Shown here piece by piece: positions 2,168-54,700 of a stretch of DNA of 64,000 nucleotides. The notes under the pieces are model-generated. The model did no database searches. It had not been told where the DNA came from and saw only the letters and a list, made by a program, of their open reading frames with translations. The position numbers and the translations under genes were made by a program. Each line of letters begins with the position of its first letter. The stretch's first letter is position 1. Source of the DNA: Malacoraja senta (lineage: Eukaryota); the NCBI GenBank assembly GCA_038087875.1, contig CM075998.1:1674001-1738000 (forward strand). Reading direction: 5' to 3'.

Positions 2168-5100
2168 TAGGCTGTGGAGAACATAGGACCAAATGAGAGA
2201 TTAAAGAATCGGTTTCATGCGTATAAATATCCTTTTAGGTTTTGGTTAAAACCATTGTAGATTTTTATTGTGGGTTACCACCTGCAGCGGATCAAATACA
2301 TATCACATCACTTGTCCATTTGGCATGAGAGGAAACTTGTCACAATTCAATTTGTGTAGGATTTATTATTTTTCCTTTGTCTTTGTTGATCTCGCCAATT
2401 TACAAACACTGGTAAACATGAAGGTAAATTGAACCTTTACATTAACCTATTATAACAACCAAAGAGTACATAAAGTATATATTGTAAAGTCTAGCACGTA
2501 CATACTTGTGTGAGCAGATAGAGAGTTGGTATTGTGTTTCTGTAACTTGTAGAAGTGAATTCATTTTGGTCACAAAGTGCTTTAGCAATCATGTGCCGTG
2601 TGTCTGAGAACATTTTATTTTAAAGCGCAGACAATTAACAAATAAAAAAATAACGCAAAAATCTCATATGGTAAATTTAACTTGGCCTTAAATTTAATAA
2701 AGTTTCAAATTCAAAAAAACAACACAATTGAATTAACTGCCAATTTTATTTCCCGAGTGATGGGTTGGATGTGAAAGTATCACAGCAGCATCCCATTCAC
2801 CACCTTTAGTATGTCACCCATGAAAATTTCAGCAAGTCTGTTTCCCAGAGGCTTCTGTCTCCTTTGGCATCTTGCTTGAGAAGGCACAAAAATAATGATA
2901 GTGGTACAAAGATTATAAAAGGGGAAATTTAAGCACTGAACAATTCAGAGAATTCAAATGACTGACTTGCACTAATGTCAATTCTGTGCAAAGTTTGAGG
3001 TAAGGAGGCCACCTGCATTTTACATTACATTTAAATATTTTAAGAATGAACAGAGTTTTGCCATTTTAAGTCTACTTCCATTTGATGTGCCATGAATTTT
3101 ATCAAATGCAATGACAACCCATTTAAACTTTCACTGAAATAATGCTGTGTCACTTTTCAAAATTTATTTAACTCAAAATATAATGCCTAAACAATACCAC
3201 AAAGATGCACTACTTTAACAACTGTAGCATCACTCCCAATTCAAAAAAAAAGTGCTGGAAAAGACCAAAGTGATTACACACAAGAAGTTGCTTTTAACGG
3301 GGCAAAAAAGTCCAAACTGTTTGCCCTTGAATACAAGAACTGATCCTAGTACTGGTGGCAATGTTAAATGAACATTTTATTTTAGGTGACGGGGAGAGGG
3401 AGGTGGGGGGGGAACTTCCATTCCAAAACAAATTGGGGCAGTATTCTTCCTTCTAAAATCCATTTCCAAAAACTTCACCACAAAGCATAAATCCCACACA
3501 CCTTGTAAAAAAAAAAATCCATGTGTGCAAATCCAGAGGTTTGTTACAGGGAAATCATTTACAGTAATCTTCATTAACTAAATGCTATTGGAATATCCCC
3601 CTAATTATTTTGTGTTCCAGTTACCATTCACTGCAGCCGAAGGAATTAACAATAAGGAATAAATTGTCAAATCAGTGGAATTTATAATATTAGGCTTAGC
3701 ACAATGCAGAGTGCAAAATGGACATTATTCTTTCAGTTAATTTATTGTTATTAAATCATAGCTATTTTATTTTTTTGTACCTTTTCCTCTTCCTTCTGCC
3801 TCATGCTGTTTTTACTGCAGACATGTGATCGACAAGGTCTGTGCTCATTTTGTGGGGGCTACCAGTGGATGTCCTAGTGATTAACTTCGTGAGGTAGAAA
3901 TATTCATATATCCCTTCATCTTTCAAGAAGCTAATATTTGAATAATCTAATAATCTTTTCTAGCAGCTTCGACAGGAAATGGACAGAATTTACCCAGTGC
4001 TGTATTTGTATGCTAGTGTGGATTTGGAGTTGCAACTCTCATGTTTATGAGCCCATTGCTCCACTATTCCTCACAATATCAGCATTGGGACCATTGGATT
4101 TTCTAAGCAAGTTGAGTTTTAGTTTAGAGATTACAATAAAAAGGGTCAACAGAAAAGAAATCAAGGAACAGAACTCTGCTTTTCTTCCCACCAAAATTGT
4201 TCGCCGATTTAAGTGTTTTATGCAGCAAAGTAGAAAAATCCCGAAGAATGATTGTTACTGCTGCCACTGTTTTTGTATACACTGAGTGGAAGACTCAGAC
4301 AACCCAAGAAATGAATAATAAAGGATTGTTGGCAGATTTCCTGAACTTAGTTTAAAATATTATGTTTTCTAAAGATTATATGGCAAAACCACAAATATCT
4401 TCTCGTGAACATTCAGAACTTGTTCTTGTGAAATTCTGGTTTGTAGAGTTTGACGAGGCATCAAAAACCATCAAAGATGTGGCTTAAGCCTTTCAAATTC
4501 TCAAAATGCAAATTATTATGCCAACTGATAAATCTTCAAAATTATATTCTTTCCTTCTGCGTCTTTGTTCCTCGCTAATAAATGAGGAGTGCTGAGTTAC
4601 TGAGACTTGCAAGAGAGTTTTAGATGTTATGTGAAAATTAAGGACCAGTGTTGCATTTTCCACACAACTATTTTTCCCTTTTCAGGCAAGTTCTGCAACA
4701 TGTTTTGTGTGGGGAAAAACGCTAGTACCTGTACCATAAAATGTTATTCTACGTCTTTATAAAAAATACTATTGAAATTTCAGATACGTGCAAATCTAAA
4801 ATGCGTTGCAACAATCGTAAAGAAGGGCATGTACCCAAAATCAGCTTGTGTGTGGGCAAGGCAAAATTATGAAGTGTATCCAAACTAATTAAAAAATTAA
4901 ATTGCTGAATATTCTAGCATTTATTTTGCAAAATAAAAGGATGATAATGATCAGTTGTGTGTACAAATGTTCATTCTGCTGATGATTGTCCTTTGTGACA
5001 AAATCAATTTGCTCATTGATATAGTCATCTTAAAAGAGTTAAATTGTCTTGAAAGACAATTTAATCTATGTATACATATTTTGAAAGTGCCATTATGTTG

Positions 5101-6126: not shown

Positions 6127-9100
6127 CTGCAAAGATACAGAAATAACGTAATTCAGATACAAAATAGTGATAACTAATTAGAAATGAGCCTTCCCTCAAA
6201 TGAAGACACAAAGTGCTGGAGGAACTCAGCGGGTCAAGCAGCATCTGTGGAGAATGTGGATAGGCGATGTTTCGGGTTGGGTTTATTCTTCAGTCTGATT
6301 GTGGTATGAGGGAGATAGCTGGAAGAGAGGAGAGGGCAAGACAAAGCCTGGCGAGTGATAGGTGGATGCAATCCCCTCAATTGTTTTACTTTCCTAAGAC
6401 TTGTGACTGAGCCAGGGCATGGTGCCATAGGTCCTAACATCCCATCCGAACTTCACCCGTGACTATCAAAGCATGAATCTGGACAATCTGGCAATTTCAT
6501 CAGGGCAGCATCACAAATGAGCCAGATCCTGAGGTTATCAAAACATCTATTTTTACCAGCATCTTAATAGGGTCTCAGTTAGTAGCAGCCTTGTCGCTGA
6601 ACAAAATAATTGTGGGTTAGGTCCCACTCTCGATTCTTAGATGGTGCTCCAGTGCAGTACATGAGGAAGTGCTGCACTGTTGAAGGTGTCTTTTGGGTGA
6701 GGCCTGAAGCCACATCTGCTCTCCAAGGTAGGTGTGAAAGGTCACATAATTTTTAAACACAGAAAGTAGTTTTATCCCAGATGGCCAGGCCAGTTTCAAA
6801 ATCACTATAAACCAATGTCTTGTCCTTATCACTTTGACATTTATGGGAACTTGCAGTGTGTAATGGCCTACTTAATTTCCTATCATATAAACATAAATAC
6901 TCTTTAAAACTACTTTGTTGGCTGTAAAGTGCTTTAGAACTTGATGTCATAAATCAGAACTTTTTGTATATTCTCATTTACTTTTTCCTGCACAAGTTAC
7001 TTTTATTATTCAGATTACTCACAATCAAGGGGGTGCATAAAACACATGTTATATTTAAAACAGGAAAATCTTACTCCTAATTAGAATATACAAGCTTAGC
7101 AGAACTTCTGAATTTTGTTTACATTATACAGGCGGTGTAACTGCGGTGTTCTGATTCGACAGATCCTCTTCAAAAATGACAGACAATTTTTAACCTTTTG
7201 AAAGTGCTTCAAATTAAACAGAATATATGGTCAGACAAAACCTCATGAAGTGCATATGTTGTTCCCAGTGTAGTTGAATTAGTTTAGCTGTATTTGAAGA
7301 ATCCTTCGATCAGCCAGTAACTATACAAAATCCTTGGCATACGAAAATGCCCATAGTTACTTGAAGGATTGTGTTTATGTGTGTTGATTGAAGCAATTTT
7401 GGTGTTATATCGCAAGATCTTTAATATTTAAAAAAATTAAGCAATTTGTTCAGTTGCTCACTCTGTTTTAGTCAAAATCAGTTTGTGCTTACCCAGTGAT
7501 TTCTGAAATTCCTAGTGAGTACCGCTGGTGCAAAGGACCTGGCTGGATTCATTCCACACCCCGTGTAATAAAGCTGGAGAAAACAGTGGAGAGATAATTA
7601 TATGTCAAAAAAGTTTCAATGGTCAGTTCATAAGAAGGAAAGGTACTAATTGCCATTCATCACTACTTGAGTATTAAGAGCCCTGAGTTTAAACTCCTGT
7701 CAATCATCAATACTATGCAAGAAAATATGAAAGAACATAAAAACATTTGCCAATTAATCACACAGGATCACAAATGACTTTTCTGATTGTGTTTCTGAGA
7801 CTCGGGCTTCAAATATATTCACCAGGAGAGCTGCAAACCCCCCCCCCCCCAACTAGCCATCCCAGCAGCTCACCAGATTTAAAAGCAAAACCATCCACAC
7901 CTGGCAGCAGTTGAGCCAGCTACAGGGCAGCAACCACAGAGGGCGGACTGGGCCGGGTGGACATCAGTAGCCCAGATTATTGTTGTGGGCACCAGAAGCC
8001 CTCAAAAATAATTCAGACCTTACCTTTGCATAGCCTCTTCTCTTCCATCACCCATGGAACTGGCCAAATCTTGCCCTCCATTTATGCCAAGCAGTCAGCA
8101 CCCAAACTTGAAATTTGGATCCTAGTTATATTTGAGGATCTCTAAGGGGCTGATTTGCCAGAAGTGCTTTAGACATGGTGTGCAGCTCTCAAAACAGAAT
8201 GAGTCACAAATTTACAACACAGAAGGAGGTTGTGCAAAACAAACCATTTGTTTATCTCATTTCCTAGTTTAGTTTAGGTGCACAGTGAAAAGCTTTTTTG
8301 TTGCGTGCTATCCAGTCAGCAGAAAGACAATACATGCCTACACACATGCCCATGGTTACTTGAAGGATTCTGTTTATGTGTGGTAATTGAAGCAATTTTG
8401 GTGTTATATTACAATATAAAGGGAATAACATTTAGTGCAAGGTAAAGTCCAATTAAAGATAGTCTAAGGGTCTCCAATGAGGTAGATGGTAGCCCAGGCC
8501 TGCTCTCTAGTTGATGGTAGGATGGTTCTGTTGCTTGGTTCGGTTGTTGGTCCACAGGAGTGGAGTTGGATTCATAAAGGTGGCAAAGATCCCATGAATG
8601 CCAATTCAACTGACTGAAAATCAACCCTCATCCTTTTCACAATGGCATGGACTCTTCCAAGGGTAATTATCATTTGGATTGAATTAGCAATTTAGCAGAA
8701 TTGCTAAAAGTTCCTGTTCAGAAATTTAGCAACAGGATGATGATCAAGAGTATGAGATTTATCTAATCTATTCCCCTTCCTCTTCTGGGGGGCCATGGCC
8801 TATTTTAGAACTTCAGTTGTATCTTAGCTAAAGGAAGCTGATACACTGGAGATTTTCTTAGCCTGGATGGGGCAGCACCACAGAGAGTTGCATTTTGCAA
8901 CGTATCTGTTGGCACAGTGCCTTTTACCTTTGAGTCCAGAGCTGAGGATATGTTCCACATCTAACGCTTTGGCAAATGAGATAGAAATTTGCAGACTTAC
9001 CCCAAAGAAGTGACCCACAGTGAGTGAAAAGCCAATGATCACGGCTGCTGAGCCCATGAATCCATTTCTGCGAATGTCTGTTGTGGCAAAAATACAGAGG

Positions 9101-12100
9101 ACAAACTGAAGAGTAAGGAATATCTCTACAGCCGTGCCCTGGCCAATACCCACTCCAGCATGCAGCTAAAGAATGAAACAAAACATCATTATTAGAAATG
9201 ACAAAATCAGGCCAGAAATGAATGTAAAATGGTGTATTTATCGGCGTTTCACGGGATATATTTGCCTGCTATCAACAATCAACAAATGACATTACTCTGA
9301 GATTGTACAATCCTCTGGGTCTGAGTTTATACTTATGTTTGAATGCCATCTTAGACCATGGATTCTTAATGTTCACAGAATGCTACATGACTTAAAGCAG
9401 TGCACACTTGCTTAGTGAGGGACCAATATTGTGTCATTCCTTCAGGAACTTGGCAATCAATTAATTGAAAGACCTCAACCTGATCAGAGGAGTAAAAGTC
9501 ACTACTTTTTCCCCCTTAATCTCCGTTAAATCTCATTTCCACCCTTCCTTTGTGAATCAAATACCCAATAGGTAGGAGCAAGCAATGAGCATAAAAGCTG
9601 AAAGATTTCCTTTGCGTTTTAATGTTCATCAGTTTTGTGATTTCTTTGCTTAATGGAGAATGGGGTTGCTCCAGTTTTGAAACTATAAAATATTGGAGTA
9701 AACCAAAGCTATCTCTACTTTGCCCAACAGTATGCATTAACGTTCAAGTGCTTCAATTTTCCATACAATGGTTTTGCATTGTCTTTTGAGAATAGCAACT
9801 AATTCTTAATTAAGTGTAGATAGACACAAAATGCTGGAGTAACTCAGCGGGACAGGCAGCATCTCTGGAGAGAAGGAATGGGTGACGTTTCGGGAAGGGT
9901 CTCGACCCGAAACGTCACTCATTCCTTCTCTCCAGAGATGCTGCCTGTCCCATTGAATTACTCTAACTTTTGTGACTGTCTTTGGTGTAAACCAGCATCT
10001 GCAGTTCATTCCTGCATAAGTGTAGTTCAGAGACATGAAGCTATATTCATGTGGAATTAGATTGAGAGTGTTCACTGTGCTTCAAGTGGGACAGCCAATA
10101 ATCTGCAATGAGTCATGATTTCAGAAAGCTAAATTTAGAACAAAGGCAAATATTTTATAAATATTGTTTTAACCTACCTCCCACTGGGAAAAGAGTTGAA
10201 TTATGACTTTCCTCCACAACTGTCAATATCTACGCCTGTGAACTCAATATTGGATTAATGTATTACATGAATAACGGGCTTTGTTCAGCATGTAGGAAAC
10301 TTTTAACATCCTATAATTAAATTATATCAATGATGGATTTTAGCTAAATTTGACAACTATTACTTTTACTATTTTTAAGTATCTATCCTTCGTGAAATCC
10401 TAGTCACGACTGCCTATGCATTTTCCAAAACACGAGGAAGTATACTTGTTTTCTGCACATATATGCAAAATATTTCACATTGTACAACATATAAATGTCC
10501 TTGCGAATTTAATTCTTCATTTTTCATTCTTGTGCATTTTACGACGTGACGTTTTTACAACTGAGACAAAAAAAATCATTATTTATTGCTTGGGAGAAAA
10601 AAGATAGTCCAAAAAATCAATCATTCAAATATGTGGTTCTCCCATTCCACATACACTCTATTGCACAGTCTAACAACATTAACACTTGCGTCTAGCATAA
10701 GCTCTTATCCATAGTGTGCATGCATCATGCAGCCACTTTATGCTGCTTTAAGCCAGAGGCATTTGACTTGTCCATGTTTTTCATTGCCTGGTGTTCACAG
10801 CTGATGTGCAAAACATTTTAGTCCCTATCATTAAAACAGTTTACCCAAACAAATGAGTTTCTATGGTTTACAGTGTTTGCAGTGGAATAAATCAATGCCA
10901 GGTTGAATTGGAAATGCAAAATGATTCAAACAAATATGAAAATAAGACTAGTTCATTATATTGCTCAAATAATATCAAGCTGAGTGAGTTACTTTGAAAT
11001 GTGCAGTTATCTTGTAGGAAACTGTATACGCCAAAATCCCACAAACACCAACGCGATGAATGACTCGTTAATCTGCTTGTGATGAAGTTGTCTGAGAAAG
11101 ATTTGTAGAATGTGGGATCTCATGGGAGCTACAAAGTTCACTTGTAATACCAGAACAGGTAGATGGGCCTTGCTTGAGCATGTGGGGTGGTTCAGGTATA
11201 GTAGGAAATCTTCTAAAATACTTAACTCAAACAATATTAATGTGAATGCATCATGATGCCACACAGTCAAAAGCAAAGTGTAACGTCCTATGTTCTAACT
11301 CAGCAATTGATGCATTTGCTTAGAAAGGCAAAATATATTTTATGCCTAAAACTAAACCAACAGTATTCTTAATGTGTCACCATTATTTAATTTTAACTTT
11401 TGAGATTAGTACTACTTTTGAGAAGATTGACCATTAAATGTCATTGCATCTAATTTGCGCTGAACTGTGTATATTTGTTCTTTGGTAGAAAATGCATTTC
11501 AATTAATTTTCCGTGATATTTTGGAAAGTGTCCAAAGCTATGTCAATAGATTGTATGTAGGTCCGACGTAGTATATAGTAAAGTACAATAATACAGTAAA
11601 ATATACAACTTAACCTTGTCAGGCAAATACTGAATTTTGCATCTAGTCCATGGTGGGCTTGTGGCTAAATGTATATTTAATCCTAGGAAGGTACATGCTA
11701 GCTTATAAATTGCAGTCCTGGCTAACGGTTTTGGTTATTCACAGACTAGTAGGGCATTATACATTCACTTGGAGGACTAGTTGTAGTGTGTCACCATTAT
11801 CTGAAGTTGAGGTAGTCATTCAAAGAAATGTTAATGTTTGTATATAGGGAGTATCCTTGGGAGTAGAGAAGGGGAGAACTTCAGCCATTGTTCCTAGCAG
11901 CCAGAAAAGAGTCACTGTTTCAAAACCTACATATGCAAAGCTTTGGTAGAAACATTAGATCATGGCAAACTTTCATAGACATAGTGCTTGTTATGAGTGA
12001 ACTGCTTTCTTTTAAAGAGCTACTTGCATGTATCCCATCTTATCATGCACTTTGTGTTGTTTTAATATATAAACCAGCAGCCGCAGTTCCTTGTGTCTAC

Positions 12101-15100
12101 ATGATCATGCCTTTCAACGAATCTCAAAATGCTTAAGATACAGGAAAGCATTCCGAATTCAATCAACGTTAGATAAATGTAACATCGCATTTCTACTTGA
12201 TTCCACAAAGAACAAAAAGGTCAACGAACAAGCAATGTTCTTTGCCAATATATTGTGCACAGCAGAGTTCTTGTAGAAAGCAGGAAGAACAATGCCCGGC
12301 TTGTTTCAAGGCAGTGTTGAATCCCGCATGACATCAATTATGAGTTACTCCAGTATTTTGTGTCTATCCTCGGTGGAAACCAGCATCTGCAGTTCCTTCC
12401 AACACAATTATCTCTTGATTGGTTTTAGTTTTGCGCACACAGAAATATCCCCAAATTAGCAATAACTGAGCGAGCAGATGATTCTCTGCTGTGATTTGCA
12501 GACAAGGTGCTACATTTAATGACAAGCAGCGCAGATTCTCCACATGAGATCATGTGTTTGGGCAGTGTCTTGTGCAGTGGGCGTTCGGCCAACGACAGGC
12601 TATTCTGCTTGGGTATGTTTACGCAGAGCGCAAGATCCCACGAACAACCGTCTGGTCAACAACTAGCCTTTTGGCAGTGATTTTGCGCTCAGCAAGATGC
12701 CAGGAAAATAGCAGACATTGAATGGACACTTAGTCCATCTTGGCGATGCTTTGCACACAGCAAGATCCCAGTTAAAATATAATTAGGGCCAGCTAGCCTG
12801 CTCTGGAAATGTTTTGCGCACAGCAAAATGTCACGAGAAAACGGAATTAGTGGACACCTAGTCAATCTTAGTGATGTTTTGCGCACAGCAGGACTCCAGT
12901 TAAAATGTAATTTGGGTCATTTAGTCTGCTTTGGTGGTGTTTGCGCACCGCAAGATCACAATAAAAGTACAATCTCGGCCACCTAGTCTCCTCTGGCGAT
13001 GTTATGCGCACAGCAAGCTGTCACAAGCATCAGTGATTGCCTAGTCTGCTTTGGTGGTCATTTGCGCACACAGCAAGATCCAACAACTGTTTTAAGCAGA
13101 GTGATATAGTGTGGAAACAGGCCCCGGCCCAACTTGCCCACACCGGCCAACATGTCCCCGCTACACTAGTCCCACCTGCCAGCATTTGGCCCATATCCCT
13201 CCAAATCTGTCCTATCCATGTAGGATATGTTTGGCGATGTTTTGCGCATAGTTGGAGCAACATTGCGTTGTCCTGCGCCTCCGTGCGTTTTTGATGCTTT
13301 GTGCACAGGAAGACCCCACAGAACTGCAGGATCCATGACCCAGTTTGCTTCTCATGGTGTTTTGCGCTCAGCGAGACCCCACAAATAACAGTGCCAGTGA
13401 CCGGTTGGCCCGCTTTGTTAGCTTGCATGTAGCGACATTGCCCAAAGAGCAGCCGGATCAGTGCTCCCGCCCCTCCTCCCCTCTTGTCGCCGGCCACGTT
13501 GCTGAGAAAGTGGCCCCGGAGTACAGATTACACTGGGAATAGCGCAGGGCATCAGTTTACCTTTGCCACAATTGACAGCGAAACGGAGACGCGCTTACAA
13601 TAGAGCGCTGCTTGCAAGTGGAGTTGATTATTTTGCCAGTTTTATTTTCCGGAATGTGGCCGCTATACCTGCTCGTCAATCAATCAAAGGCCATTTCTAA
13701 AAGCCTGATAGATTATATAGATTAAAAATCTTATAGATCTTATAGATTTAGCCCACAGAACTTTCGAATCACATTAAAAACAACGCTCAAGATACGAGTA
13801 ATAACGCAAATAAAACCACGCCACTTTTTAAAAGTTGGACATGCATTAAAACAGAAATTAACTCTCCCTTTACGCGATTCTTCGCTTGAAATCCTATGAT
13901 GTTCGTATCCTGTGAACGGGTGGGAAATCTGCCGTTTTGGATTATCCAGATAAATATTCAGTTCAGAACTAATCAAACGAAATCAACAAAACTTTTCGGA
14001 ATTCGCCAGATCTTGCATTACAAAACAATTGATACAAACGCCTACCCTCGCTGTTTCACCAACGCGAGCATCGTGCGAACTACCCGCGTGAAAACCGTGT
14101 TCCTACCTTCCTCGCGTTGGGCTGGAGAGAAAGGTTGGCATTTGCACCATTATGTGCAAACTCGAACCTTTGAGGCGGCCTCGGAAAGTTTTGAAAAGCA
14201 GTTTTCAGAAATATTACGCCCTTTCCCCCGAAAGACACGCGAAACACTAAACGAGATAAAACCTAACATACTCTCATTAACTCTATAGTCCACGTTGTTA
14301 TCTCCACAATTTCAATTCTACGAACTCTCGGTCCTGATGTTTCAAAATATATGGTTCGTGGAATAAACCATTGAAAATTATTTTAAGAATACTTCCAACC
14401 GATCTGTAGTTGTATGCACAAGATTAAAGTCTAAAAGAATCAGATCTGCTTTTTGACAGACCATTTATTAAATAAGATTTCGTGATACGGGAAACTTACA
14501 TTTGAAATGATTTATATTCTTTGAACACCGGCTTTTATTTTAAACCCATTTAATTCCCAGCGAAAATAATATTATTCAATTATTCGTTCAATTCGGACTC
14601 TTAACTTTGGGTAAATGTTTAAGTCCCAGAGTTTAGACGGTATTAGAATTTGGAACAGTCTTAAATAATTTCCGAATCGTCACTTTTTAAAATGTGTTAA
14701 TGTTACTTCAACCCATCTCAAAGATATTTTATATCACAAACGTTTTTAAGTTACATTTTCGGACTCTCTGCCTTCACACTCGTTGCATTTACCAATTAAT
14801 TGCCTTTGTTACTATTTTTGCACTATTTTTGATTTTCCAGGACATTTACCATTTTGCTTCAAACTTTAATATTGGGTTTTTTTTCCCCCAAAAAAGGTGT
14901 TAAGCTTGTACCAGTTCACACGTTAACTCTTCTTACAGCTTGCTATTTGCCAACAGTGAGTATATTTACCGTGTTGAGCCCTAGGTTGCCCCGTACAGTG
15001 GGAGGGGTGACCCCATACAACACAGCTGCCCCCGCCACCGCTCCCAGGAGCTGAGCTGCTATGTACATCACACAGCGGAACATGCTCAGCTGCGCCCCCA

Positions 15101-15329
15101 GCAGGTAAGCGAAGGTGACAGCCGGGTTGAGGTGCGCCCCGCTGACATGTCCCACCGCCTGCACCAGGGCAGCCAGGACAAAGCCAAACCCCAGAGACAC
15201 CAGCAGCACGTTCACGGGGCCCGGAGACCATCGCATCGTAAAGCCCAGTCCAAAAAACACGAAGAGCATGGTGGCAAAAAACTCTGCAAACACTGCCCTC
15301 CAGAACGCGATGGATTTCAACTCCCACAT
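5941..15329 (-). CDS. MIP: Aquaporin-0 / lens major intrinsic protein, 4 coding exons (14970-15329, 9001-9165, 7493-7573, 5941-6126), 263 aa
   Basis: Spliced product [20 protein letters not shown]...[10 protein letters not shown]...[17 protein letters not shown]...PIELKTQAL has two NPA boxes and AQP0-specific termini. Exon sizes 360/165/81/186 nt total 792 nt, all GT-AG and phase 0, matching known MIP architecture. Confidence 0.98.
6565..6945 (+). mobile_element. Degraded SacSINE1/DeuSINE-family SINE in aqp0 intron 3
   Basis: tRNA-like head, Deu-domain-like cagtgcagtacatgaggaagtgctgcactg, tail ttggctgtaaagtgcttt; related fragments at ~30830-31040(-), ~53220-53450(+), ~57400-57720(-). Confidence 0.65.
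7493..7573 (-). CDS. MIP: MIP/AQP0 coding exon 3 ([27 protein letters not shown])
   Basis: Acceptor ttttctccag|CTT, donor TGG|GTAAGC, 81 nt, second NPA; too short for the ORF track. Confidence 0.97.
9001..9165 (-). CDS. MIP: MIP/AQP0 coding exon 2 ([10 protein letters not shown]...TVGHFFG)
   Basis: Acceptor cattctttag|CTG, donor GGG|GTAAGT, 165 nt. Confidence 0.97.
9820..10016. mobile_element. Non-autonomous Penelope-derived hairpin element
   Basis: Two inverted copies of the PLE 3' UTR (ggcagcatctctggagagaagga / tccttctctccagagatgctgcc); TSD TAAGTGTAG at 9811 and 10017. Confidence 0.8.
10851..11206 (+). repeat. Copy A of ~350-bp dispersed direct duplication (partner 28230-28660)
   Basis: Direct sequence identity read by eye. 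Confidence 0.93.
12250..13400. repeat. Degenerate ~63-bp minisatellite (core TTTTGCGCACAGCAAGAT) inside an antisense DeuSINE-like element, interrupted by a CR1 3' fragment (~13100-13221)
   Basis: Cores at 12432, 12684, 12752, 12815, 12880, 12942, 13005, 13063 and 13363, plus decayed units in register. Confidence 0.85.
14970..15329 (-). CDS. MIP: MIP/AQP0 coding exon 1 (aa 1-120, first NPA)
   Basis: ATG at 15329 in context AAGATGT; donor ACG|GTAAAT; ORF 14943..15329. Confidence 0.97.
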
Positions 15330-16077: not shown

Positions 16078-17412
16078 CAATTAAGATAGGGACAAGATGA
16101 ACTCACAAATAATATGAATGAGGTGGCTTAGTGCTTAGTCTCGGCTTGCACCAGTGAATAATCAAAATGGACAGGGCATTTGAAGATATTAGAACGCGTC
16201 AAAACATTTTAGTTGAAAGAAAGTTGATAAATTGGACACACAATGAGGATAAAATTCCAAGATTCCACCCATGCATACTAAAAGAAGCTGGGAACAAGAT
16301 AGGGGAGGGACTATAATAGAAGAGCGACGTTATGTGTATGCACAAGATAAAAGATGAGATACACGCTGTTCCAGGAAATGGAGATTGTGGGTGAAATGTA
16401 GGAATGTGAGAAGTATTGATCCACAGAAACCAGTAGCGCACCTATTGTTTTTTTACCCTTTCTGCAACATTTTAGACTTGAAATGGCTGTGGGTTGGAGG
16501 CAAATCATGTTAGATCCAGGCCATGACTCCAAAATTCGACCATCTCCAGCTACTTCCTTCACAAGGCCAGAAGTGGGAATGTTCCCTGAAGTTTGCACAA
16601 TGTTCAGTTCCATTTACAACTCCTCAGGTAACGGAAATGAAAAACAAAACTGCAGGTGCTGGAGATCTGAAATTTAAAAAAAAACAGAAAATGCTGGAAA
16701 ATGCGTTACAGGTCAGGCAGCATCTGTGGAAAGTGAAACCGAGTTGATGTTTCTGGTCTGACATAAGGTCTTCAACCTGAAATAGTAAGCTGGTTCTCTT
16801 TCCACTGTTGCTGCCTGACCTTCTCTGCACCTTTTCCAGCCTAATGGGGTGCGGACGAGCAGCATTTTCACCATTTATTGCAGTCTTTTTGTTTAGCAGT
16901 CAATATATAAATTGTGAATATTTGAAGGCCAAGGAGAGACTTCTTTAGCACTTCAATAATTACAATTTGTCTATTTGAAAACACCCTATGTATTCCTCGA
17001 GAAGGGTCCCGACCTGGAACGCCGCCTATCAATGTTCTCCAGGGATGCTGCCTGAGTTTCTCCAGCGCTTTGTGTCTTTCCTACTTATTCCTATTCCTTG
17101 CTTTTCATCCTGTAATCAATCCTCGAAGCATATTACCATCTTAACCTCAACCCCCTGAGCCCTCATTTTAAGTAACAACCTGTATGGTATCTTATCAAAT
17201 TCATTTTGAAAACCTAGATATACCACATCTACTAGTTCTCTTTTATCTACCCTGCGATGTACATCCTTGTTAAATTAGATGCAGGTCTGCAGGTCTAGGA
17301 GTTAATCTGGTTTTAGTCACCTTTACGATTTAACGTTTCTTGCTGTCACTAGACCCTCAATTATTGTTTCTTCTGCAGTGAAGCTGATTTAAATAATGAT
17401 TTATGCATCAGT

Positions 17413-17877
17413 CATCTACATGTCTTCTTTTCTACATCGGTGAGACCAAGCGTAGGCTTGGCGATCGCTTCGCCGAACACCTCCGCTCGGTTCGCAATAA
17501 CCAACCTGATCTCCCGGTGGCTCAGCACTTCAACTCCCCCTCCCATTCCGAATCCGACCTTTCTGTCCTGGGCCTTCTCCATGGCCAGAGTGAGGACCAC
17601 CGTAAATTGGAGGAGCAGCACCTCATATTTCGCTTGGGCAGTCCGCACCCCAGCGGAATGAACATTGACTTCTTTAATTTCAGGTAGTCCTTACTTTCTC
17701 CTCCACTTCTCAGCTCTCCCTCAGCCCACCGGCTCCACCTCTTCCTTTCTTCCTCCCGCCCCCCCCCCCCACCCTCACATCAGTCTGAAGAAGGGTTTCG
17801 ACCTGAAACGTTGCCTATTTTCTTCACTCCATAGATGCTGCCTCACCCGCTGAGTTTCTCCAGCACTTTTGTCTACC
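17413..17877 (+). mobile_element. 5'-truncated Penelope-like retroelement (GIY-YIG endonuclease C-terminus + 3' UTR)
   Basis: ORF 17403..17687 YIGETKRRLGDRFAEH...VAQHFN...LEEQHLIFRLG...GMN is a PLE GIY-YIG domain; 12-bp TSD TTATGCATCAGT at 17401-17412 and 17878-17889. Confidence 0.88.
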
Positions 17878-21125: not shown

Positions 21126-21583
21126 ACTCAACTAAATCCAGTCATTTCATGGTTACCTCGACTGAAATTTACTTAATTGTTTTATTTTATATTTCCCATC
21201 TGTAACAGTGGGGTTCGATCTCTGGATCAATGGTCCAGAGCTTTGGTTGCTAATCCAGTAATTTAAAGATTGTGCCGCTGTATCTCATGTACTCCCAGTA
21301 CCAGAGTCAGTGACCCGTGAGTCAATCCCCACTTCTCCCACACATTTAAGTCTCTGATCTATTTGTCCATCCATCAATTTCCATGTGACTCGGGAAGCAA
21401 TGCAGAGATTATTACTCTTGCAGTTAAAGTGGGCCAAATGCGGGAGCTGGGACTAGTGTAGATGGGGCATGTTGGCTGGTGTGGGCAAGTTGGGCCGAAG
21501 GACCTGTTTCCATGCTGTATCACTCTATGACTCTATGACTAATACCTGGAATGAGCTTATTGTCCCCTGAGGAAAGGTTTTCT

Positions 21584-28229: not shown

Positions 28230-28660
28230 AAATGTGTTTCTATGGTTTACAATGCCAGGTTGAATTGGAAATGCAAAATGATTCAAACAAATATGAAAAT
28301 AAGACCAGTTCATTATATTGCTCAAATAATATCAAGCTGAGTGAGTTACTTTGAAATGTGCAGTTATCTTGTAGGAAACTGTATACGCCAAAATCCCACA
28401 AACACCAACGCGATGAATGACTCGTTAATCTGCTTGTGATGAAGCTGTCTGAGAAAGATTTGTAGAATGTGGGATCTCATAACTGTCACTGTATGTCATG
28501 TTGTCACGTGCGGGCGGAGCACCAAGGCAAATTCCTTGTATGTGAATACTTGGCCAATAAACTTATTCTTCATTCATGGGAGCTATAATGTTCATTTGTA
28601 ATACCAGAACAGGTAGATGGTCCTTGCTTGAGCATGTGGGACAGTTCAGGTGTAGTAGGA
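28230..28660 (+). repeat. Copy B of ~350-bp duplication, with a 97-bp LINE 3'-end insertion (28481-28577) and a 22-bp deletion
   Basis: Identity to 10851-11206; the insert matches 43073-43165 and ends AATAAA plus a TTCA-type tail. Confidence 0.93.
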
Positions 28661-28995: not shown

Positions 28996-29217
28996 TTAAT
29001 TTAACTGGTCCTGCACTTTAGCAGTCGGTTTCACCCTCATAGTGGACTGGGTGACCGTCAGTAACGAAGACCGAGACACACTGGCCGTTTCCACAATCTC
29101 AATATCTTTGCAGGTGATGCAGGCAATGAGCTTCTCCTGGGAGGCACTGGAGGCAAAAAAGAACTCGTAAGAAACACCTCCAAGGACAGCACCAAGGATG
29201 GGGCCAATCCAGTACAC
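28996..29217 (-). CDS. AQP14: aqp14 coding exon 5 (VYWIGP...VQDQLN*)
   Basis: Acceptor gttcttgcag|GTG, stop TAA at 28996-28998. Confidence 0.94.
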   Translation of the reverse strand: MYWIGPILGAVLGGVSYEFFFASSASQEKLIACITCKDIEIVETASVSRSSLLTVTQSTMRVKPTAKVQDQLN

Positions 29218-32200
29218 CTGCAAGAACAACGAATAGAAAGTTCCTGTTAATGTTATTATCATTCAGCATCGTAAACGACGGCACATCCGTGCATTAATTG
29301 CATTGTCCCTCTCCATAAAGTTGGGAGCTCTGGCCTGATGCCTGCCACTTGCATCTGCCTGTTACTGAGCTCCCGTTAACAATCAAATCCATATGGCAGT
29401 GATGACGTGGTTAGAGTTCAGTACTAGTCTGAGAGCACGCACTCCATCTTATTGAACTTGGCCTGTGCTGTGGAAATGTATCAACAGGTGGTGTTCATTT
29501 GTTCCCGGCTCCTGCAAACCTCATCCTGTAACCCACCAGCACAGACAGTGCAGGAGAGAAAGTCATGGTGAACTCTCGGTCGAGGATGCTGCCGAACGTT
29601 TAGCACTTTCCTTACTTTCCTGACTCACGGCATTTGTTCCCAGGTCCTTGAAACCTCAGTCCATAACCCATCAGTATGGACCATACAGGAGAGAAAGTCA
29701 TGTTGAACCTTTCTCTCTTGGTCATGGAAGTTGCTGAACGGCTGCTGTCTGTGTGGAGTTTGCACGTTCTCCCTGTGACCTCCGCGTGCTCCGGTTTCCT
29801 TGCACATTCCAAAGGACATGTGGGGTTGTGGGTTAATTGGCTTCTGTAAATTGCCCTATTGTCCGTGGAGAGGATGAGAAAGTGGGATAACATAGAACTA
29901 GTGTGAAGTGGTCGGCGAGGACTCGGTGGGCCGAAGGGCCTGTTTCCATGCTGTGTCTCTAACCTAATCTTTTCATTTAGTCCAAGTCTGGCAAACTGAT
30001 GGTGTGATAATCCAGCTCCATCAAATGGTGCTTTTATCCTTCGAACCACAAGAGTTGCTTCTCTGTCAGCTTCTGAAATCAACCCACAGCCTCACTTTGC
30101 TGGGCATCAGTCCACTGCTATCAGCGAGCATCAGGTGCTGAGGCTGGGATCTGAAACCATGCCGTTCACTTTATAGCCAGCAGCCCCGAACAAGAACGTG
30201 AGTGGATCTATTTGCATCGCACCTGATTTTCTGGATATTCTGAAATGTTCTGAAATAAAAGTAGGAGAATTTCACCGAAGTCCAGAACAAATAAAATGTA
30301 CCGAATGAGTTCCTAATCCTTGCAGCAGCAATGTGCTGTGTGTGGGCTTCAGCGTTAGGGCTGGCTGCGTCTGGTCTTTGGGGGACTGAGCGTGCAAGAT
30401 ATATGTTTGCATTTTAACCTCTGGAATTTTATGCGCTGCGCGTTGCGCGACTGCATTTTTGCTTTCTCGAATGGGCAGTCCTGGGTGGCTGCTTGCCGCA
30501 TTTTTGCTTTCCTGCGCATTTGCATTCATCGAGGGGCACGAAGAAAGGAATGGGGGGCAGTCAGTAGCGAAGTCCACCTTCTCCTCCTAGTACAAGCATC
30601 CCCAAAAAAACTAGGCTATGGATGTGCGCGCATATGAGCCTGTGGTAGGTTTAAGGAATGCCATGTGCAGCCTGCATGTACCTCCATAAGCCCGCATGTT
30701 TAAAGTCCTGCGCATACCGTAGTTTTATGCATTTCGTTTGCTGCACCTAGATTTCTGGACCTTGCATTCCTGAACTTCTGTATTTCTGGCAATTATTTTG
30801 TTGCTGCTGCTTCAATGTCTGCATTCTTGCTTTACTGTTGGCAAATCCTTTGCATTTGGCACCGTTCGTGCCCTCAGAGCAGGCCAAAGCCGATGAACTG
30901 CATTCATTGTTGCAAACCGTTTACGCCAATTTGCGCTCAGCAAGCTTCCACGAGCAGCGATATGTGTGATAACGACCCAATCGTCTTTTTGGTCGGGGAA
31001 TAAGCATTCGTCTGGAAACTGGGCAGTACTCCCCAACTCTTGTCTGAACTAAGACATAAGAGAGCGAACAGTGCTTTTGTATCGATACCAATACAATAAT
31101 AAAGCAGTACCTCTGTGGGTGCGGCTGGAAAGCAGCATCAGACTATTTTGTCCTCTCGTTTCCCAAGTAGGGCTTGAACCCACAATTGTATAAGAAGGAA
31201 CTGCAGATGCTGGTTTACACCAAAGATAGACACAAAATGCTGGAGGAATTCAGCGGGACAGACTGTATGAAGAAGGGTCTCGACCCGAAACGTCACCTCT
31301 CCAGAGGTGCTGCCTGTCCCGCTGAGTTACTCCAGCTTTTTGTGTCTACCCTAGATTTATCGTACAAAAGTGGGGAGATTATGTCTCTGTTATACAGAGC
31401 AGCGTTGAGACCTCATCTGGAGTACTGTGCAGAACGTTGGTCCCCATCTTTGACAAACGTTTCGAGATACAGCATGGAAACAGGCTCTTCGGGCCACCGA
31501 GTCCACTCCGATCATCGATCACCCGGTCACACTAGTTCTATGTTATCCCACTTTTGCATCCACTCCCGACACACTAGGGGGCAATTTACAGAGGGGCAAT
31601 TAACCTACAAACCTGCACGCCTTTGGGATGTGGGAGGAAACCAGAGCACCTGGAGGAAACCCACATGGACACAGGGAGAACGTGCTAACTCCACACAGAA
31701 CGCAGCCGAGGTCAGGATCGAACCGGAGTCTCTGGTGCTGTGAGGCAGCGACTCCACCAGCTGTGCTGCCCCAGATAACCCAGTTGGTAATGCACGGTGA
31801 GCAGGAGGAACAAACGGCAGTGGAGGCAGAGCCATTGAATATTTTAAAGGCAGAGATAGATGGATTCTTGCGAGGCAGGGGGTGAAAGGTTGCTGGGGGG
31901 AGACAAGAATGCCAAGTGGATGTAACAAACAGATCAGCCGCAATCTTATTAAATGGCGGGGCAGACTCGATGGGCCGAGTGGCCTACTCCTGCTCCTATT
32001 GCCCATATCTGTGTGTGTGTGTGTTCTGGTTCAGAAACAATGATTGACTGCACAACCGTCCTGCAATAAACACCTGACATCTGTTTTTCAGTGCCGAATA
32101 TATTTAAGAATGAAAGATATGGGAATACTATTTTGGAAGAACCCTTGAGGGCGCCATTGTTTTGGGATGTTGCACAAAGTTGGTTTAAGAAAGAGCAGAG

Positions 32201-51700: not shown

Positions 51701-54700
51701 TGAAAATGGCAAACATCACCTGATGCTGAATCATGAGGCTGGTGGGGCAGCAGATTCTCAGTGTTACTGCAGCAGATAGGAGAACCGCAACTTTCATTTT
51801 ATTCTCAACAGATCCCTTTGCTGGGATGGTGCTGGAAATTTATTTTGATACCAGCCCAATAATACTTGGCCATACAGTGCATATCACCAGACGTTTGGTC
51901 AAGAGAGGGGAGTTGGATAGGAATATAAGAAAGATGGAATCAATTGGCTGAGTATGGGCATAATCCACTTCCTCTGGAATATCAAATGGCTTGGGGGGGG
52001 AAGAGAAGTCAAAAAAACAGATTATTTAAATGGAGAGAGACAAAGTGAGTGAAGTACAGAAAGATCCACAGGTTCTAGTGCAGGAATAACAAGAAGCCAG
52101 CAGGCAGGTCCAACGCGATCATTAGAAGTATTTAAAATGGAGGCAGATAAATATTTGATAGTTCGAAGAATAGAGGGGCGTGGAGAAATAGCTCAGGAGA
52201 GGAGTTGCACCATCTATTACTAGTTTATCATTATCAATCCGAGAAAATCTAACAGACAGACCGCCATGAAAATGAAAGTCAGATGTATACTGACCATACT
52301 GGAGGGGGGAGCAAGCATGCGGCTTGGATGCCAGGCGTTTTCACATGGAGTGCGAGTACTGCTGAAAGGACAGTTAGATGGTCGTAAGGCTCCATCGGGT
52401 GTTTGCATGGCTGGAGATAAAAGAGAAGATTTTATGTTCAGCATCACCACAGAACAGTACAGTCCCTTCGGCCCACAATTTACGTACCAAAAATTATGCC
52501 AAGACAAACGCTTATCTACCTGCACATAATTCATAACCCTCCAATCCCTAGACAATCCAACTCTACCTTAATAATATTTATTTGCCATTTGTGAGCTTCA
52601 CTGTTGAGTCTCACAACTCTTGCTGTAAAGAAGCTTCTCATAGTAGCAAATGCATTTTAAATAAAAGGACACAATGTGCTGGAGTAATTCACGAGGTCAG
52701 GCAGCATCCTTTGAGAACATGCATAGTTGTACGTTTTGGGTTGAGACTCTTCTTCAGACTGATTGGGGGGGGGGGGGGTTAAGGAAAGAGTGATGACACA
52801 GGCAAGAGAGGGGGCGTTTGATAGACAGATGGTTGGAACAAAGGGACAAAGACAAAAAGATAAGAAAGGAAGGAAGGTTGAAGACAGGTTTGAAGATTTG
52901 CGGATTGCAAAGCCAGAGGGAGGAAATTGGCAGGGGGGGGGGGGGTATTTTCAGTCTCTGCCCTTGCAGTAAGGCTCTCATCCATGCTTTTATTTACTCT
53001 CAAACATAACTAATACAAAATTCACCCATGTGAATTTGTTGGCGTCTCAGCAGGATGCACAAGAGAAAAGTGTATAGGAAATCAATACACAGACCACTAG
53101 TTCAAAGTGAACACAATTGATCCTTCTCATATAAAGCTCTGCCACTGCATTCAAATTTATACCAAGTGGAGACTTTGAATTTGTGTGCATTCTATAATAG
53201 TTGAATTACTAATACGTAATTGGAAGATGTGGGTTCAATCTTCATTATTGAGCAGTTCTTGATGACGATACCAAAATCAAAAACAGTAACAACACTGGGC
53301 TAATCACCTGGCTCCTGATATTCAGCTGAGAACAGCACTTGGACCAGACCAGCCAACTTGCCCAGTCATTGTCACAGTGGGGCCCGCCATGCACAAATCA
53401 GCTGCCACATATCTCTGCATTATAGTGGTGACTGGACTTCAAAAACATTCTCGGTAGAGTATGGAAACAGGCTATTGAGCCCAACATGCCCCCGTCTACT
53501 CTAGTCACACCTGTCTGCTTTTTCCCCATATCCCTCTAAACCTATCCTGTCCATGTACCTGTCCAAATTTCCTTTAAATGTTATTGTTGTACCTGCCTCA
53601 ACTACATACCCTGGCAACTCGTTCTAATATATCCATCACCCTCTGATTATGAAGCATTTTCAGACAGTAGAGCAAGCTGTTAAGGCAAATACACTTTTTT
53701 TTCCACCTACCTTTGGCGTGTGGTTTCCAGGCGCAGGAGACTCTGGCAGAAACGGACGTGGGAGAAGCAGAGCTAGAGGATTCACTGGGTTCTTCCCCCT
53801 GGAGAGAGGCAAAGAAAGTGTTACATAGTTCTTCAATTATGAAAAGGGGTCAAAAATGAACAAAGGCCAAACTATTGAACGAGATAATTCTAACAAGGGG
53901 AGTAAAAGATAGTGGTTTTACTGGCATGGCTGCAATTAATACAAATTATTTCTTCACTCTTACCATTAGCCAAATTGGAATTGCAGGAGTCCCAAGTTAA
54001 AAGTTTGACCTTTGCTCAAAAACAACAGTGGTCACAAATGTACTGAAGTTTGTGATTAGTTTTTTTTTAAATGTTAAATGTTACCACAAATTATAGAATA
54101 TAGAAGAGTATAGCACAAAGACAGCCCCTTAGGTCCAACAAAGTCTCTGCTGCACATGATACCAAGAGAAACTAATCTCCTCTGCCTGTACATGATCCAT
54201 ATCCCTCCATATCCATGTGCCTATCTAGAAGCCTCTTAAATGCCACTATCATATTTGCCTCCTCTACCACCCCTGGCAGAGTTCCAGGCATCCACCACTC
54301 TTGTGTAAAAATAAACTTGCTCTTCTATTCCACATTCTAAAGACTACAGACCACACGTCCTTCCTCCATTCTTTAATTTCCACTTTGCAAAAATGCGCTA
54401 TAGACGGGCCAGTTTAATCCTTTGCATCAATCATACCTGCTCTATATTTGCTGTAAAAACTAAACTAACGGATGTGAGGAAAGCAGAGATGTCATTTTGG
54501 ATTTACTTGACACAGCTGACACATTAGTTGGCGAGTAGGAGAATAAATATCTCGGCATGGCTTTCTTCACCCCATCGAAGCAGGTCATATTAAGTTTATA
54601 TTTCCTTGGCGAATGACATCCCGTCTGTGTGAATTTGCTGGCGTCTCAGCAGGATGAATAAGAGAGAAGCTGCCCTTTTTCCATTAGGCCAAGATTGGGT

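What the first reader, a model, noticed from the sequence alone, without database searches (positions are those of the whole stretch)
12250..13400. SINE-born, helically phased array of metal-response-element cores in aqp0 intron 1
Seen: roughly 15 diverged units of ~63 bp (core spacings 68, 63, 65, 62, 63, 58; about six helical turns), partly alternating A/B. The best-kept part is TTT-TGCRCNC-AGCA: nine plus-strand TGCRCNC matches (12432-13363) and one minus-strand match (12626), mostly retaining the CpG. The unit matches an internal segment of the antisense DeuSINE-like copies at ~30925 and ~57520, and SINE-like sequence resumes after ~13430, so the array arose by internal amplification of a SINE. 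Established: TGCRCNC is the MTF-1 core, clustered MREs drive zinc induction, Zn2+ modulates AQP0, and Deu-domain SINEs have been exapted as enhancers. Inference: a candidate zinc/metal-responsive intronic enhancer of a lens water channel; the TGCTGWG on the other strand could instead be read by large Maf factors.
Basis: partly seen in the sequence, partly recalled or inferred. Interest (0 to 1): 0.72.

Follow-up and report, generated by a model that had tools for sequence, protein, structure and literature searches.

The report
Ancient SINE-derived minisatellite in aqp0 intron
The repeat array is real and arose inside a SINE, but it is a roughly 300-million-year-old fossil minisatellite shared by skates, rays and sharks that drifts at the neutral rate of the intron, so its "metal-response" motifs are inherited SINE sequence and show no sign of being a selected zinc switch.

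Summary
Every sequence observation holds. About 15 units of ~63 bp lie at 12251-13424 in intron 1 of a minus-strand aqp0/MIP gene, with ten TGCRCNC matches at the stated positions.

The SINE origin is now shown. A profile of SINE copies from outside the locus matches every unit over the same ~60-bp stretch. In the sevengill shark ortholog it also continues into both flanks (collapsed element E 2.6e-18).

New here: the array sits at the same place in aqp0 intron 1 of three other skates, sawfish, numbfish, bamboo shark, sevengill shark and whale shark. All show the same unit junction, so it predates the shark/batoid split.

The enhancer reading is not supported:
- TGCGCAC is the SINE's own ancestral sequence at that spot.
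- Among four skates the 7-mers vary as often (6/68) as the rest of the array (85/824) and of the intron (380/3990).
- Three of the window's ten cores are missing in at least one other skate. Narcine has only three cores in its array.
- The extended MRE flank is absent.
- Helical phasing is not significant (P 0.48).

CpG retention has a regional explanation. The array lies inside a CpG-retaining domain covering the 5' half of intron 1 in the six species measured.

The scan had not reported this locus before.

The parts
12100..12250 (-). Left flank: the 3' part of the SINE copy that hosts the array. The SINE lies on the minus strand, sense to aqp0.
   Evidence: The collapsed Heptranchias element matches window 12100-12242 at E 7.9e-7. 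The flank is conserved in Pristis and Narcine.
12251..13424 (-). Tandem array of about 15 units of ~63 bp, derived from one internal SINE segment. It carries nine plus-strand and one minus-strand TGCRCNC matches.
   Evidence: Units map to positions ~125-190 of a SINE profile built from copies outside the locus.
12681..12953 (-). Best-kept centre with the 128-bp A/B higher-order repeat.
   Evidence: TRF period 128, 2.1 copies, 78% matches. A-A and B-B pairs are seen in the alignment.
12341..12411 (.). Fragment of an unrelated, very common dispersed repeat inserted into the array. CAATTAT is found on both sides.
   Evidence: It has 20 further matches in the window. It is present in all four skates and absent in Pristis, which has CAATTAT once.
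13098..13222 (.). Fragment of a second unrelated dispersed repeat that interrupts the array.
   Evidence: Matches at 21430-21526, 53481-53557 and elsewhere. It is shared by the four skates and has no counterpart in the Pristis, Narcine or shark arrays.
13425..13667 (-). Right flank: the SINE body continues after the last unit.
   Evidence: The collapsed Heptranchias element, positions 241-487, matches window 13419-13667 at E 1.4e-4. The orthologous flank matches in Pristis at E 2.6e-28, Chiloscyllium at 1e-27 and Rhincodon at 8e-26.
9166..14969 (-). aqp0/MIP intron 1, with a GT donor at 14969-14968 and an AG acceptor at 9167-9166.
   Evidence: Exon 1 matches lens MIP at 7.7e-56.
14970..15329 (-). 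aqp0 exon 1 (coding part).
   Evidence: It is 90-93% identical to exon 1 in the shark loci.
12250..14969 (.). CpG-retaining domain, made of the proximal half of intron 1 plus the array. CpG observed/expected is 1.17 in the proximal intron and 0.57 in the array, against 0.38 in the distal intron.
   Evidence: CpG turnover among the four skates is 43% (proximal) and 51% (array) against 83% (distal), P 2e-6 and 1.3e-3.

Best explanation
An old tRNA-type SINE copy lies in aqp0 intron 1, on the same strand as the gene. One internal segment of about 64 bp was amplified head-to-tail into a minisatellite of some 13-15 units. That segment runs from the T-run and GCGCAC motif to the GTGATG motif. The amplification happened before sharks and batoids split, roughly 300 million years ago by my own recollection of published dates. 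Since then the array has mostly sat still and decayed in place, with local turnover in some lineages.

TGCGCAC is simply what the SINE carries at that position, so every unit inherited an MTF-1-core look-alike. The cores are not being maintained by selection.

The CpG in the cores has lasted better than usual because the array lies at the distal edge of a CpG-retaining domain. That domain is probably hypomethylated in the germline (inference) and covers the 5' half of intron 1 in every elasmobranch measured.

Shown here: the repeat structure, the SINE origin, orthology across species, neutral substitution rates and the CpG pattern. Inferred: the methylation state and the absence of function.
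For: 1. SINE origin. A profile of five SINE copies from outside the locus hits every unit at profile positions ~125-181.
- In Heptranchias the first unit plus left flank matches positions 52-191 (E 8.6e-15).
- The last unit plus right flank matches positions 125-221 (E 4.1e-11).
- The collapsed element matches positions 52-220 (E 2.6e-18).
- The window's own flanks match that element.

2. Age. Arrays lie at the same place of intron 1 in three further skates, unit for unit. They are also in Pristis and Narcine, Chiloscyllium, and Heptranchias and Rhincodon.
- The unit junction (GTGATG then TTTTGCGC) is the same throughout.
- Inner units in all lineages share CTAGTC, where the first Heptranchias unit has TTAATC.

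3. Neutrality among four skates. Variable columns are 6/68 in the 7-mers, 85/824 in the rest of the array and 380/3990 in the rest of the intron. By unit register the 7-mer gives 9/89.

4. Core turnover. Of the window's ten cores, seven are kept in L001 and eight in L002 and L003. Pristis has six plus-orientation cores, Narcine three, Chiloscyllium five and Heptranchias ten.

5. Ancestral motif. Dispersed copies carry TGCGCTC, TGCATAC, TGTACAC or TCGCAC at the same spot.

6. Deeper divergence. Against Pristis the array aligns at 67.6-67.7%, lower than other parts of the intron at 73.6-78.9%.

7. CpG domain.
Against: - Within the window the core block is better kept among units than the middle and the 3' block.
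- Against Pristis the register-defined 7-mer is 80% identical (67/84) against 66-70% for other unit parts.

That excess is about what ascertainment on window-intact cores and alignment anchoring would give. It also only reaches the level of ordinary intron sequence. Still, a weak constraint (less than a two-fold rate reduction) is not excluded by 68-89 sites.

- The array has kept 13-15 units in several lineages.
- It sits inside a domain whose CpG retention is conserved, which could reflect regulatory use.
Confidence: 0.8

Rival explanations
1. The array is a selected cluster of MTF-1 metal-response elements, phased on the helix, that makes aqp0 respond to zinc or other metals in the lens.
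For: There are ten TGCRCNC matches in 1.15 kb, most preceded by a T-run. The CpG is kept in eight of them. The array lies in a CpG-retaining domain. The 7-mer shows slightly higher identity to Pristis than the other unit parts do.
Against: - The 7-mer is inherited from the SINE.
- There is no rate reduction among four skates. A five-fold reduction would predict about 1.4 variable sites in 68; 6 are seen.
- Cores are lost or gained between close species, and only three remain in Narcine.
- The extended MRE flank gGCCc, whose absence was linked to low MTF-1 affinity in PMC9820605, is AGCAA here.
- Phase coherence is not significant.
- The position is 1.5-2.7 kb inside an intron, not in a promoter.
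Confidence: 0.04
2. The array is a working part of a conserved intronic regulatory or non-methylated domain of aqp0. It would act through a factor other than MTF-1, or as the edge of that domain. What matters would be repeated binding sites and CpG density, not exact sequence.
For: In six species measured, CpG observed/expected is high in the proximal intron (0.51-1.17) and in the array (0.49-1.11). It falls to 0.22-0.43 just beyond the distal end of the array (the profiles show the same drop in Rhincodon). CpG turnover among skates is significantly slower in the array than in the distal intron. The array has persisted with 13-15 units in skates, sawfish and two sharks.
Against: - Non-CpG sites in the array and proximal intron change at least as fast as in the distal intron (8.7% and 10.3% against 7.0%).
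- Narcine has lost about half of the units.
- Part of the array's CpG excess is just the one CpG per unit.
- Persistence is expected for neutral DNA in these slowly evolving genomes, where the whole intron still aligns between skate and sawfish.
Confidence: 0.12
3. The arrays are not one ancient amplification. They arose or were re-made separately in different lineages from the same orthologous SINE copy, by concerted evolution or recurrent slippage at the same microhomology.
For: Five central Heptranchias units are nearly identical to each other, so turnover does occur. Strict one-to-one unit orthology between shark and skate was not shown; the alignment is ambiguous there.
Against: The same arbitrary junction occurs in all lineages. 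The derived CTAGTC state of inner units is shared across sharks and batoids. The same two mid-unit variants (CAGTGACC at the edges, TTAATGRMC in the centre) occur in sharks and batoids. Skate and Pristis units are colinear.
Confidence: 0.1

Closest known systems
Transposon-derived minisatellites and SINE-derived satellites (human TE-derived tandem repeats, PMC3389668; SINE-derived satellites of squamates, PMC10702118)
   Same: Tandem units are copied from a portion of a SINE. The array is embedded in, and flanked by, the rest of the element. Copy number is modest.
   Different: In the DNA held here this is a single intragenic locus and not a multi-locus, subtelomeric satellite family. It is shared at one orthologous site by sharks, rays and skates, so it is far older than the lineage-restricted squamate cases.
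Metallothionein-type MRE clusters bound by MTF-1
   Same: Several copies of the TGCRCNC core are close together, most with a 5' T-run.
   Different: The extended 3' consensus is absent. The site is mid-intron and not promoter-proximal. The spacing is set by the repeat unit. The cores show no selective maintenance. No metal-related gene context is known for aqp0 transcription.
Exapted ancient SINEs (LF-SINE and AmnSINE1 enhancers; Deu-type SINEs such as SacSINE1, PMC5499810)
   Same: An ancient tRNA-type SINE of cartilaginous fishes lies inside a developmental or tissue-specific gene. SacSINE1-like elements are reported in the skate Leucoraja erinacea.
   Different: Exapted SINE enhancers are recognised by sequence conservation well above neutral. 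Here the array aligns worse than the surrounding intron. Membership of this SINE in the Deu superfamily could not be tested, because no reference consensus was available.
Non-methylated (CpG) islands of cold-blooded vertebrates
   Same: A stretch of 3-4 kb keeps CpG at or near the expected frequency in several species, next to strongly CpG-depleted sequence.
   Different: G+C is only 0.37-0.49, so classical CpG-island criteria are not met. The peak lies inside intron 1 and not on the promoter. The methylation state is inferred, not measured.

Membership tests
MTF-1 metal-response element cluster | Core TGCRCNC present in several copies | tested here: met
   Ten matches in 12432-13369.
MTF-1 metal-response element cluster | Extended consensus NTGCRCNCgGCCc on the 3' side, linked to affinity | tested here: not met
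   The units read TGCGCAC followed by AGCAA. The consensus and its link to affinity come from PMC9820605.
MTF-1 metal-response element cluster | Cores maintained by selection (slower change than neighbouring sequence; kept in related species) | tested here: not met
   Variable columns are 6/68 in the cores, against 85/824 in the rest of the array and 380/3990 in the rest of the intron. Three of the ten cores are absent in at least one other skate. Narcine has three cores.
MTF-1 metal-response element cluster | MTF-1 binding and induction by Zn/Cd | not testable with these tools
   Needs EMSA or ChIP and reporter assays.
SINE-derived tandem repeat (TE-derived minisatellite) | Head-to-tail units with a constant period | tested here: met
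   TRF periods 63 and 128. There are 13 contiguous units in Heptranchias.
SINE-derived tandem repeat (TE-derived minisatellite) | Unit homologous to a defined internal segment of a dispersed SINE | tested here: met
   A profile of SINE copies from outside the locus matches all units at positions ~125-181. The unit HMM hits the dispersed copies.
SINE-derived tandem repeat (TE-derived minisatellite) | The rest of the SINE continues on both sides of the array | tested here: met
   In Heptranchias the flanks match at E 8.6e-15 and 4.1e-11, and the collapsed element at 2.6e-18. The window flanks match at E 7.9e-7 and 1.4e-4.
Deu-type SINE (SacSINE1-like) | tRNA-derived head with a B box | tested here: inconclusive
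   The reverse complement of the right end of the copies at ~31170 and ~6610 reads GGTTCAAGCCC and GGTTAGGTCCC, which resemble a B box. ARAGORN and Rfam find no tRNA.
Deu-type SINE (SacSINE1-like) | Deu highly conserved domain | not testable with these tools
   No SacSINE1 or Deu consensus could be obtained. There was no supplement and no text match.
Exapted SINE enhancer (conserved non-coding element) | Sequence conservation above the neutral level of the surrounding DNA | tested here: not met
   Between window and Pristis the array is 67.6-67.7% identical, against 73.6-78.9% for other intron HSPs. Among the four skates, 10.2% of array columns vary against 9.5% elsewhere.
Non-methylated / CpG island | CpG observed/expected above ~0.6 over more than 500 bp | tested here: met
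   The proximal intron has 0.81-1.17 in five of six species and 0.51 in Heptranchias. The array has 0.49-1.11.
Non-methylated / CpG island | G+C above 50%, and absence of methylation | tested here: not met
   G+C is 0.37-0.49. Methylation itself is not testable here.

The most novel reading that the evidence does not exclude
The SINE-derived array is the distal module of an intronic non-methylated regulatory domain of aqp0, kept since before sharks and rays diverged. Its repeated CpG-bearing motif would recruit a methylation-sensitive factor (MTF-1 being only one candidate). That factor would hold the domain open or mark its boundary.
Probability: 0.1. Interest if true: 0.6.

Novelty: new member of a known kind. 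Interest (0 to 1): 0.3.

Why it matters
As a metal-responsive enhancer it would have linked zinc biology to transcription of a lens channel. The evidence does not support that, so the locus should not be carried forward as an MRE enhancer.

Two things remain useful:
- It is a clean, datable example of a minisatellite born inside a SINE that has survived in one orthologous intron across sharks, rays and skates. That shows how slowly neutral DNA turns over in elasmobranchs, and it gives a natural ruler for indel, turnover and CpG-decay rates.
- It exposes a conserved CpG-retaining domain in the first half of aqp0 intron 1. Any skate or shark methylome or lens ATAC-seq data set can test this.

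Tried and rejected
- BLAST and MAFFT of the window's own four SINE copies against the array flanks gave nothing convincing, because those copies are too decayed. The Heptranchias ortholog solved this.
- Rfam and ARAGORN on the whole window found no hits.
- No published SacSINE1 or Deu consensus could be obtained. The paper had no held supplement and motif strings matched no text. The family name therefore remains untested.
- The exon-1 protein search found only Callorhinchus as a close hit in the allowed length range. A second search with that protein reached the elasmobranch cluster.
Callorhinchus was not on record, so the holocephalan state is unknown.
- Rhincodon (L008) holds 700 N. These were left alone, and only unit hits and CpG profiles outside them were used.
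- The repeat at 10973-11127 was considered as an unamplified control copy in the same intron. It was rejected because it belongs to a different subfamily with another core sequence.
- The helical-phasing idea was tested and rejected.
- The large-Maf half-site idea was judged weak by eye only: TCAGCA occurs in 2 of 15 units.
- Earlier scan notes: nothing on this locus.
Full report
**1. What is in the window**

The gene is aqp0/MIP on the minus strand. The ORF at 14943-15329 matches lens major intrinsic protein structures at E 7.7e-56, against about 4e-43 for AQP2. Exon 1 ends at 14970 with a GT donor. Exon 2 is 9001-9165, behind an AG acceptor. Intron 1 is therefore 9166-14969, and the finding lies in its middle.

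Tandem Repeats Finder reports a 63-bp period (12741-13017, 4.4 copies, 68% matches). It also reports a 128-bp higher-order period (12681-12953, 2.1 copies, 78%). A profile of the six best units finds further in-register units from 12429 to 13417. By register I count 15 units in 12251-13424, several of them barely recognisable.

That is 10 in 1.15 kb against 40 in the remaining 62.85 kb. Two fragments of unrelated dispersed repeats interrupt the array at 12341-12411 and 13098-13222. These account for the 252- and 300-bp gaps between cores.

**2. SINE origin**

The window holds four decayed copies of one SINE family: 6600-6990 on the minus strand, ~30830-31200, ~57380-57780, and 60600-61150 with an insertion. 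On their own they only showed a 25-60-bp resemblance around the core.

I built a profile from these copies plus the sawfish ortholog of one of them. None comes from the array locus. The profile hits each unit at the same profile positions, about 125-181.

The decisive evidence comes from the ortholog in the sevengill shark Heptranchias perlo (L007), where the element is well preserved:
- The first unit plus left flank matches profile positions 52-191 (E 8.6e-15).
- The last unit plus right flank matches positions 125-221 (E 4.1e-11).
- Eleven inner units match positions 125-~181.
- The element with the array collapsed to one unit matches positions 52-220 colinearly (E 2.6e-18).

That collapsed element in turn matches the window's left flank (12100-12242, E 7.9e-7) and right flank (13419-13667, E 1.4e-4). 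It also matches the right flanks in sawfish, bamboo shark and whale shark at E 1e-26 to 1e-28.

The B-box-like end of the family lies to the right on the plus strand. The SINE is therefore on the minus strand, sense to aqp0. Whether it is a Deu-type SINE could not be tested, because no reference consensus was reachable.

**3. Age**

A protein search led to the elasmobranch AQP0 cluster. From there I fetched genomic loci with introns.

Three other skate assemblies (L001-L003) are 93-96% identical to the window across intron 1. They carry the array unit for unit, with both inserted repeat fragments.

The array is also at the same place in intron 1 of:
- Pristis pectinata (L004, ~3667-4488);
- Narcine bancroftii (L005, ~3160-3800, about seven units);
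- Chiloscyllium (L006, 4353-5322, about 15 units);
- Heptranchias (L007, 3620-4458, 13 units);
- Rhincodon (L008, ~3856-4765; its N run was left untouched).

Three features argue for a single origin:
- All lineages share the same arbitrary unit junction.
- Inner units share the derived CTAGTC state, absent from the first Heptranchias unit.
- The same two mid-unit variants are present, one at the edges and one in the centre.

The simplest reading is one amplification before sharks and batoids diverged, with later local turnover. In Heptranchias, for example, five central units are nearly identical. The date of that split (roughly 300 million years) is from my own knowledge and was not computed here.

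**4. Are the cores under selection?**

Among the four skates, I counted columns with any difference:

| Sequence class | Variable / total | Percent |
|---|---|---|
| TGCRCNC 7-mers | 6 / 68 | 8.8% |
| Rest of the array | 85 / 824 | 10.3% |
| Intron outside the element | 380 / 3990 | 9.5% |

By unit register, using all units, the 7-mer gives 9/89, the middle 24/180 and the 3' block 28/310. A five-fold constraint would predict about 1.4 variable sites in 68, so strong constraint is rejected. A constraint below two-fold is not.

Core turnover is visible:
- The minus-strand core at 12626 exists only in the window.
- The core at 13005 is lost in all three other skates.
- The core at 12684 is lost in L001.

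Sawfish keeps six cores in the same orientation, numbfish three, bamboo shark five and sevengill shark ten.

At the skate-sawfish distance the 7-mer is 80% identical (67/84), against 66-70% for other unit parts. The window cores were chosen because they are intact, which removes the window lineage's share of change. Aligners also anchor on the repeated core. And 80% only equals ordinary intron HSPs (73.6-78.9%), whereas the array as a whole aligns worse (67.6-67.7%). I therefore read this as no evidence for constraint, with weak constraint not excluded.

The better within-window conservation of the core block is real. It is at least partly explained by the structure of the array. The A and B unit types differ mainly by their mid-segment, which also contains most of the indels. 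Within A-A and B-B pairs, core and non-core identity are similar (by eye).

**5. The MRE reading itself**

- TGCGCAC is the SINE's ancestral state at this site. Dispersed copies show it intact or with CpG-type decay: TGCGCTC, TGCATAC, TGTACAC, TCGCAC.
- The extended MRE consensus has gGCCc after the core. A core-only match in MT1A was linked to low MTF-1 affinity (PMC9820605). Here the flank is AGCAA.
- The 63-bp period is the length of the duplicated SINE segment. Individual spacings of 68 and 58 bp are half a helical turn off. Phase coherence at 10.5 bp is R 0.29, P 0.48 against a jitter null.
- Nothing here bears on binding or induction, which need experiments.

**6. Why the CpGs survive**

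CpG observed/expected in the window is 1.17 in the proximal intron, 0.57 in the array, 0.38 in the distal intron and 0.18 beyond exon 2. The same step is seen in a second skate, sawfish, numbfish, bamboo shark and sevengill shark. It falls at the distal end of the array in each.

Among the four skates, CpG dinucleotides vary as follows:

| Region | CpG variable / total | Percent | P vs distal | Non-CpG variable |
|---|---|---|---|---|
| Distal intron | 50 / 60 | 83% | - | 7.0% |
| Proximal intron | 29 / 68 | 43% | 2e-6 | 10.3% |
| Array | 20 / 39 | 51% | 1.3e-3 | 8.7% |

So the array shares a regional reduction of CpG decay with the AT-rich but CpG-replete sequence next to it. The most economical inference is germline hypomethylation of this block. 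Because the domain is conserved across elasmobranchs, I keep a roughly 10% rival in which the domain, array included, has a regulatory role.

**7. Comparison with what is known, and verdict**

Tandem repeats born from parts of transposable elements are well documented. Examples are human TE-derived minisatellites (PMC3389668) and SINE-derived satellites of squamates (PMC10702118). This locus is a new, unusually old, single-locus member of that kind.

It does not qualify as an MRE cluster, because the extended consensus and selective maintenance are not met. It does not qualify as an exapted SINE enhancer, because conservation is not above neutral.

Interest is modest. The proposed zinc enhancer is not supported. 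The deep orthology of a minisatellite and the conserved CpG-retaining domain are worth a note and are cheaply testable with methylome or ATAC data.

The scan's earlier notes hold nothing on this locus. One note on another piece of this genome says it is a skate, which fits the 93-96% identity to three skate assemblies.

Noticed in passing
window 13421-14969 (proximal part of aqp0 intron 1); the same stretch in L002, L004-L007: This AT-rich sequence (G+C 0.30-0.46) has CpG at or above the expected frequency (o/e up to 1.5). Six elasmobranch species show the same property, although the sequence itself is not alignable between skate and shark. It looks like an intronic non-methylated island. The peak lies inside the intron and not on the promoter.
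   Followed up: partly
L007 3877-4190 (Heptranchias perlo aqp0 intron 1): Five central units of the array are nearly identical to each other and share a derived mid-unit variant. The array has therefore been partly re-amplified or homogenised in this shark lineage.
   Followed up: partly
window 10973-11127 and 28332-28463; L001 7442-7602, L002 7195-7361, L004 5579-5737, L005 5302-5428, L007 5274-5512, L008 5593-5770: A related but distinct SINE-like repeat, with TGTATACGCCAAAATCCC at the core position, sits in the distal part of intron 1. It has counterparts at the corresponding place in skates, sawfish, numbfish and sharks. A second copy with an identical core segment lies near the neighbouring aquaporin gene.
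   Followed up: partly
window 6600-6990 (minus strand), L004 9990-10470: A copy of the same SINE family as the array's host lies in a downstream aqp0 intron. It is orthologous between skates and sawfish (E 1.8e-32), so that insertion also predates their split.
   Followed up: partly
window 28996-29262 (minus strand): This ORF ends like the last exon of another aquaporin (VYWIGPILGAVLGG...). A second aquaporin gene therefore probably lies about 14 kb from aqp0 on the same strand.
   Followed up: no
window 12341-12411: A fragment of a very abundant dispersed repeat has about 20 further matches in the window. It is flanked by CAATTAT on both sides, where the sawfish has the motif once. This looks like a target-site duplication dating the insertion to the skate lineage.
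   Followed up: partly
window 17403-17687 (plus strand): This 94-aa ORF (…GETKRRLGDRFAEHLRSV…NSPSHS…) looks from memory like the GIY-YIG endonuclease part of a Penelope-like retroelement. It lies upstream of aqp0.
   Followed up: no
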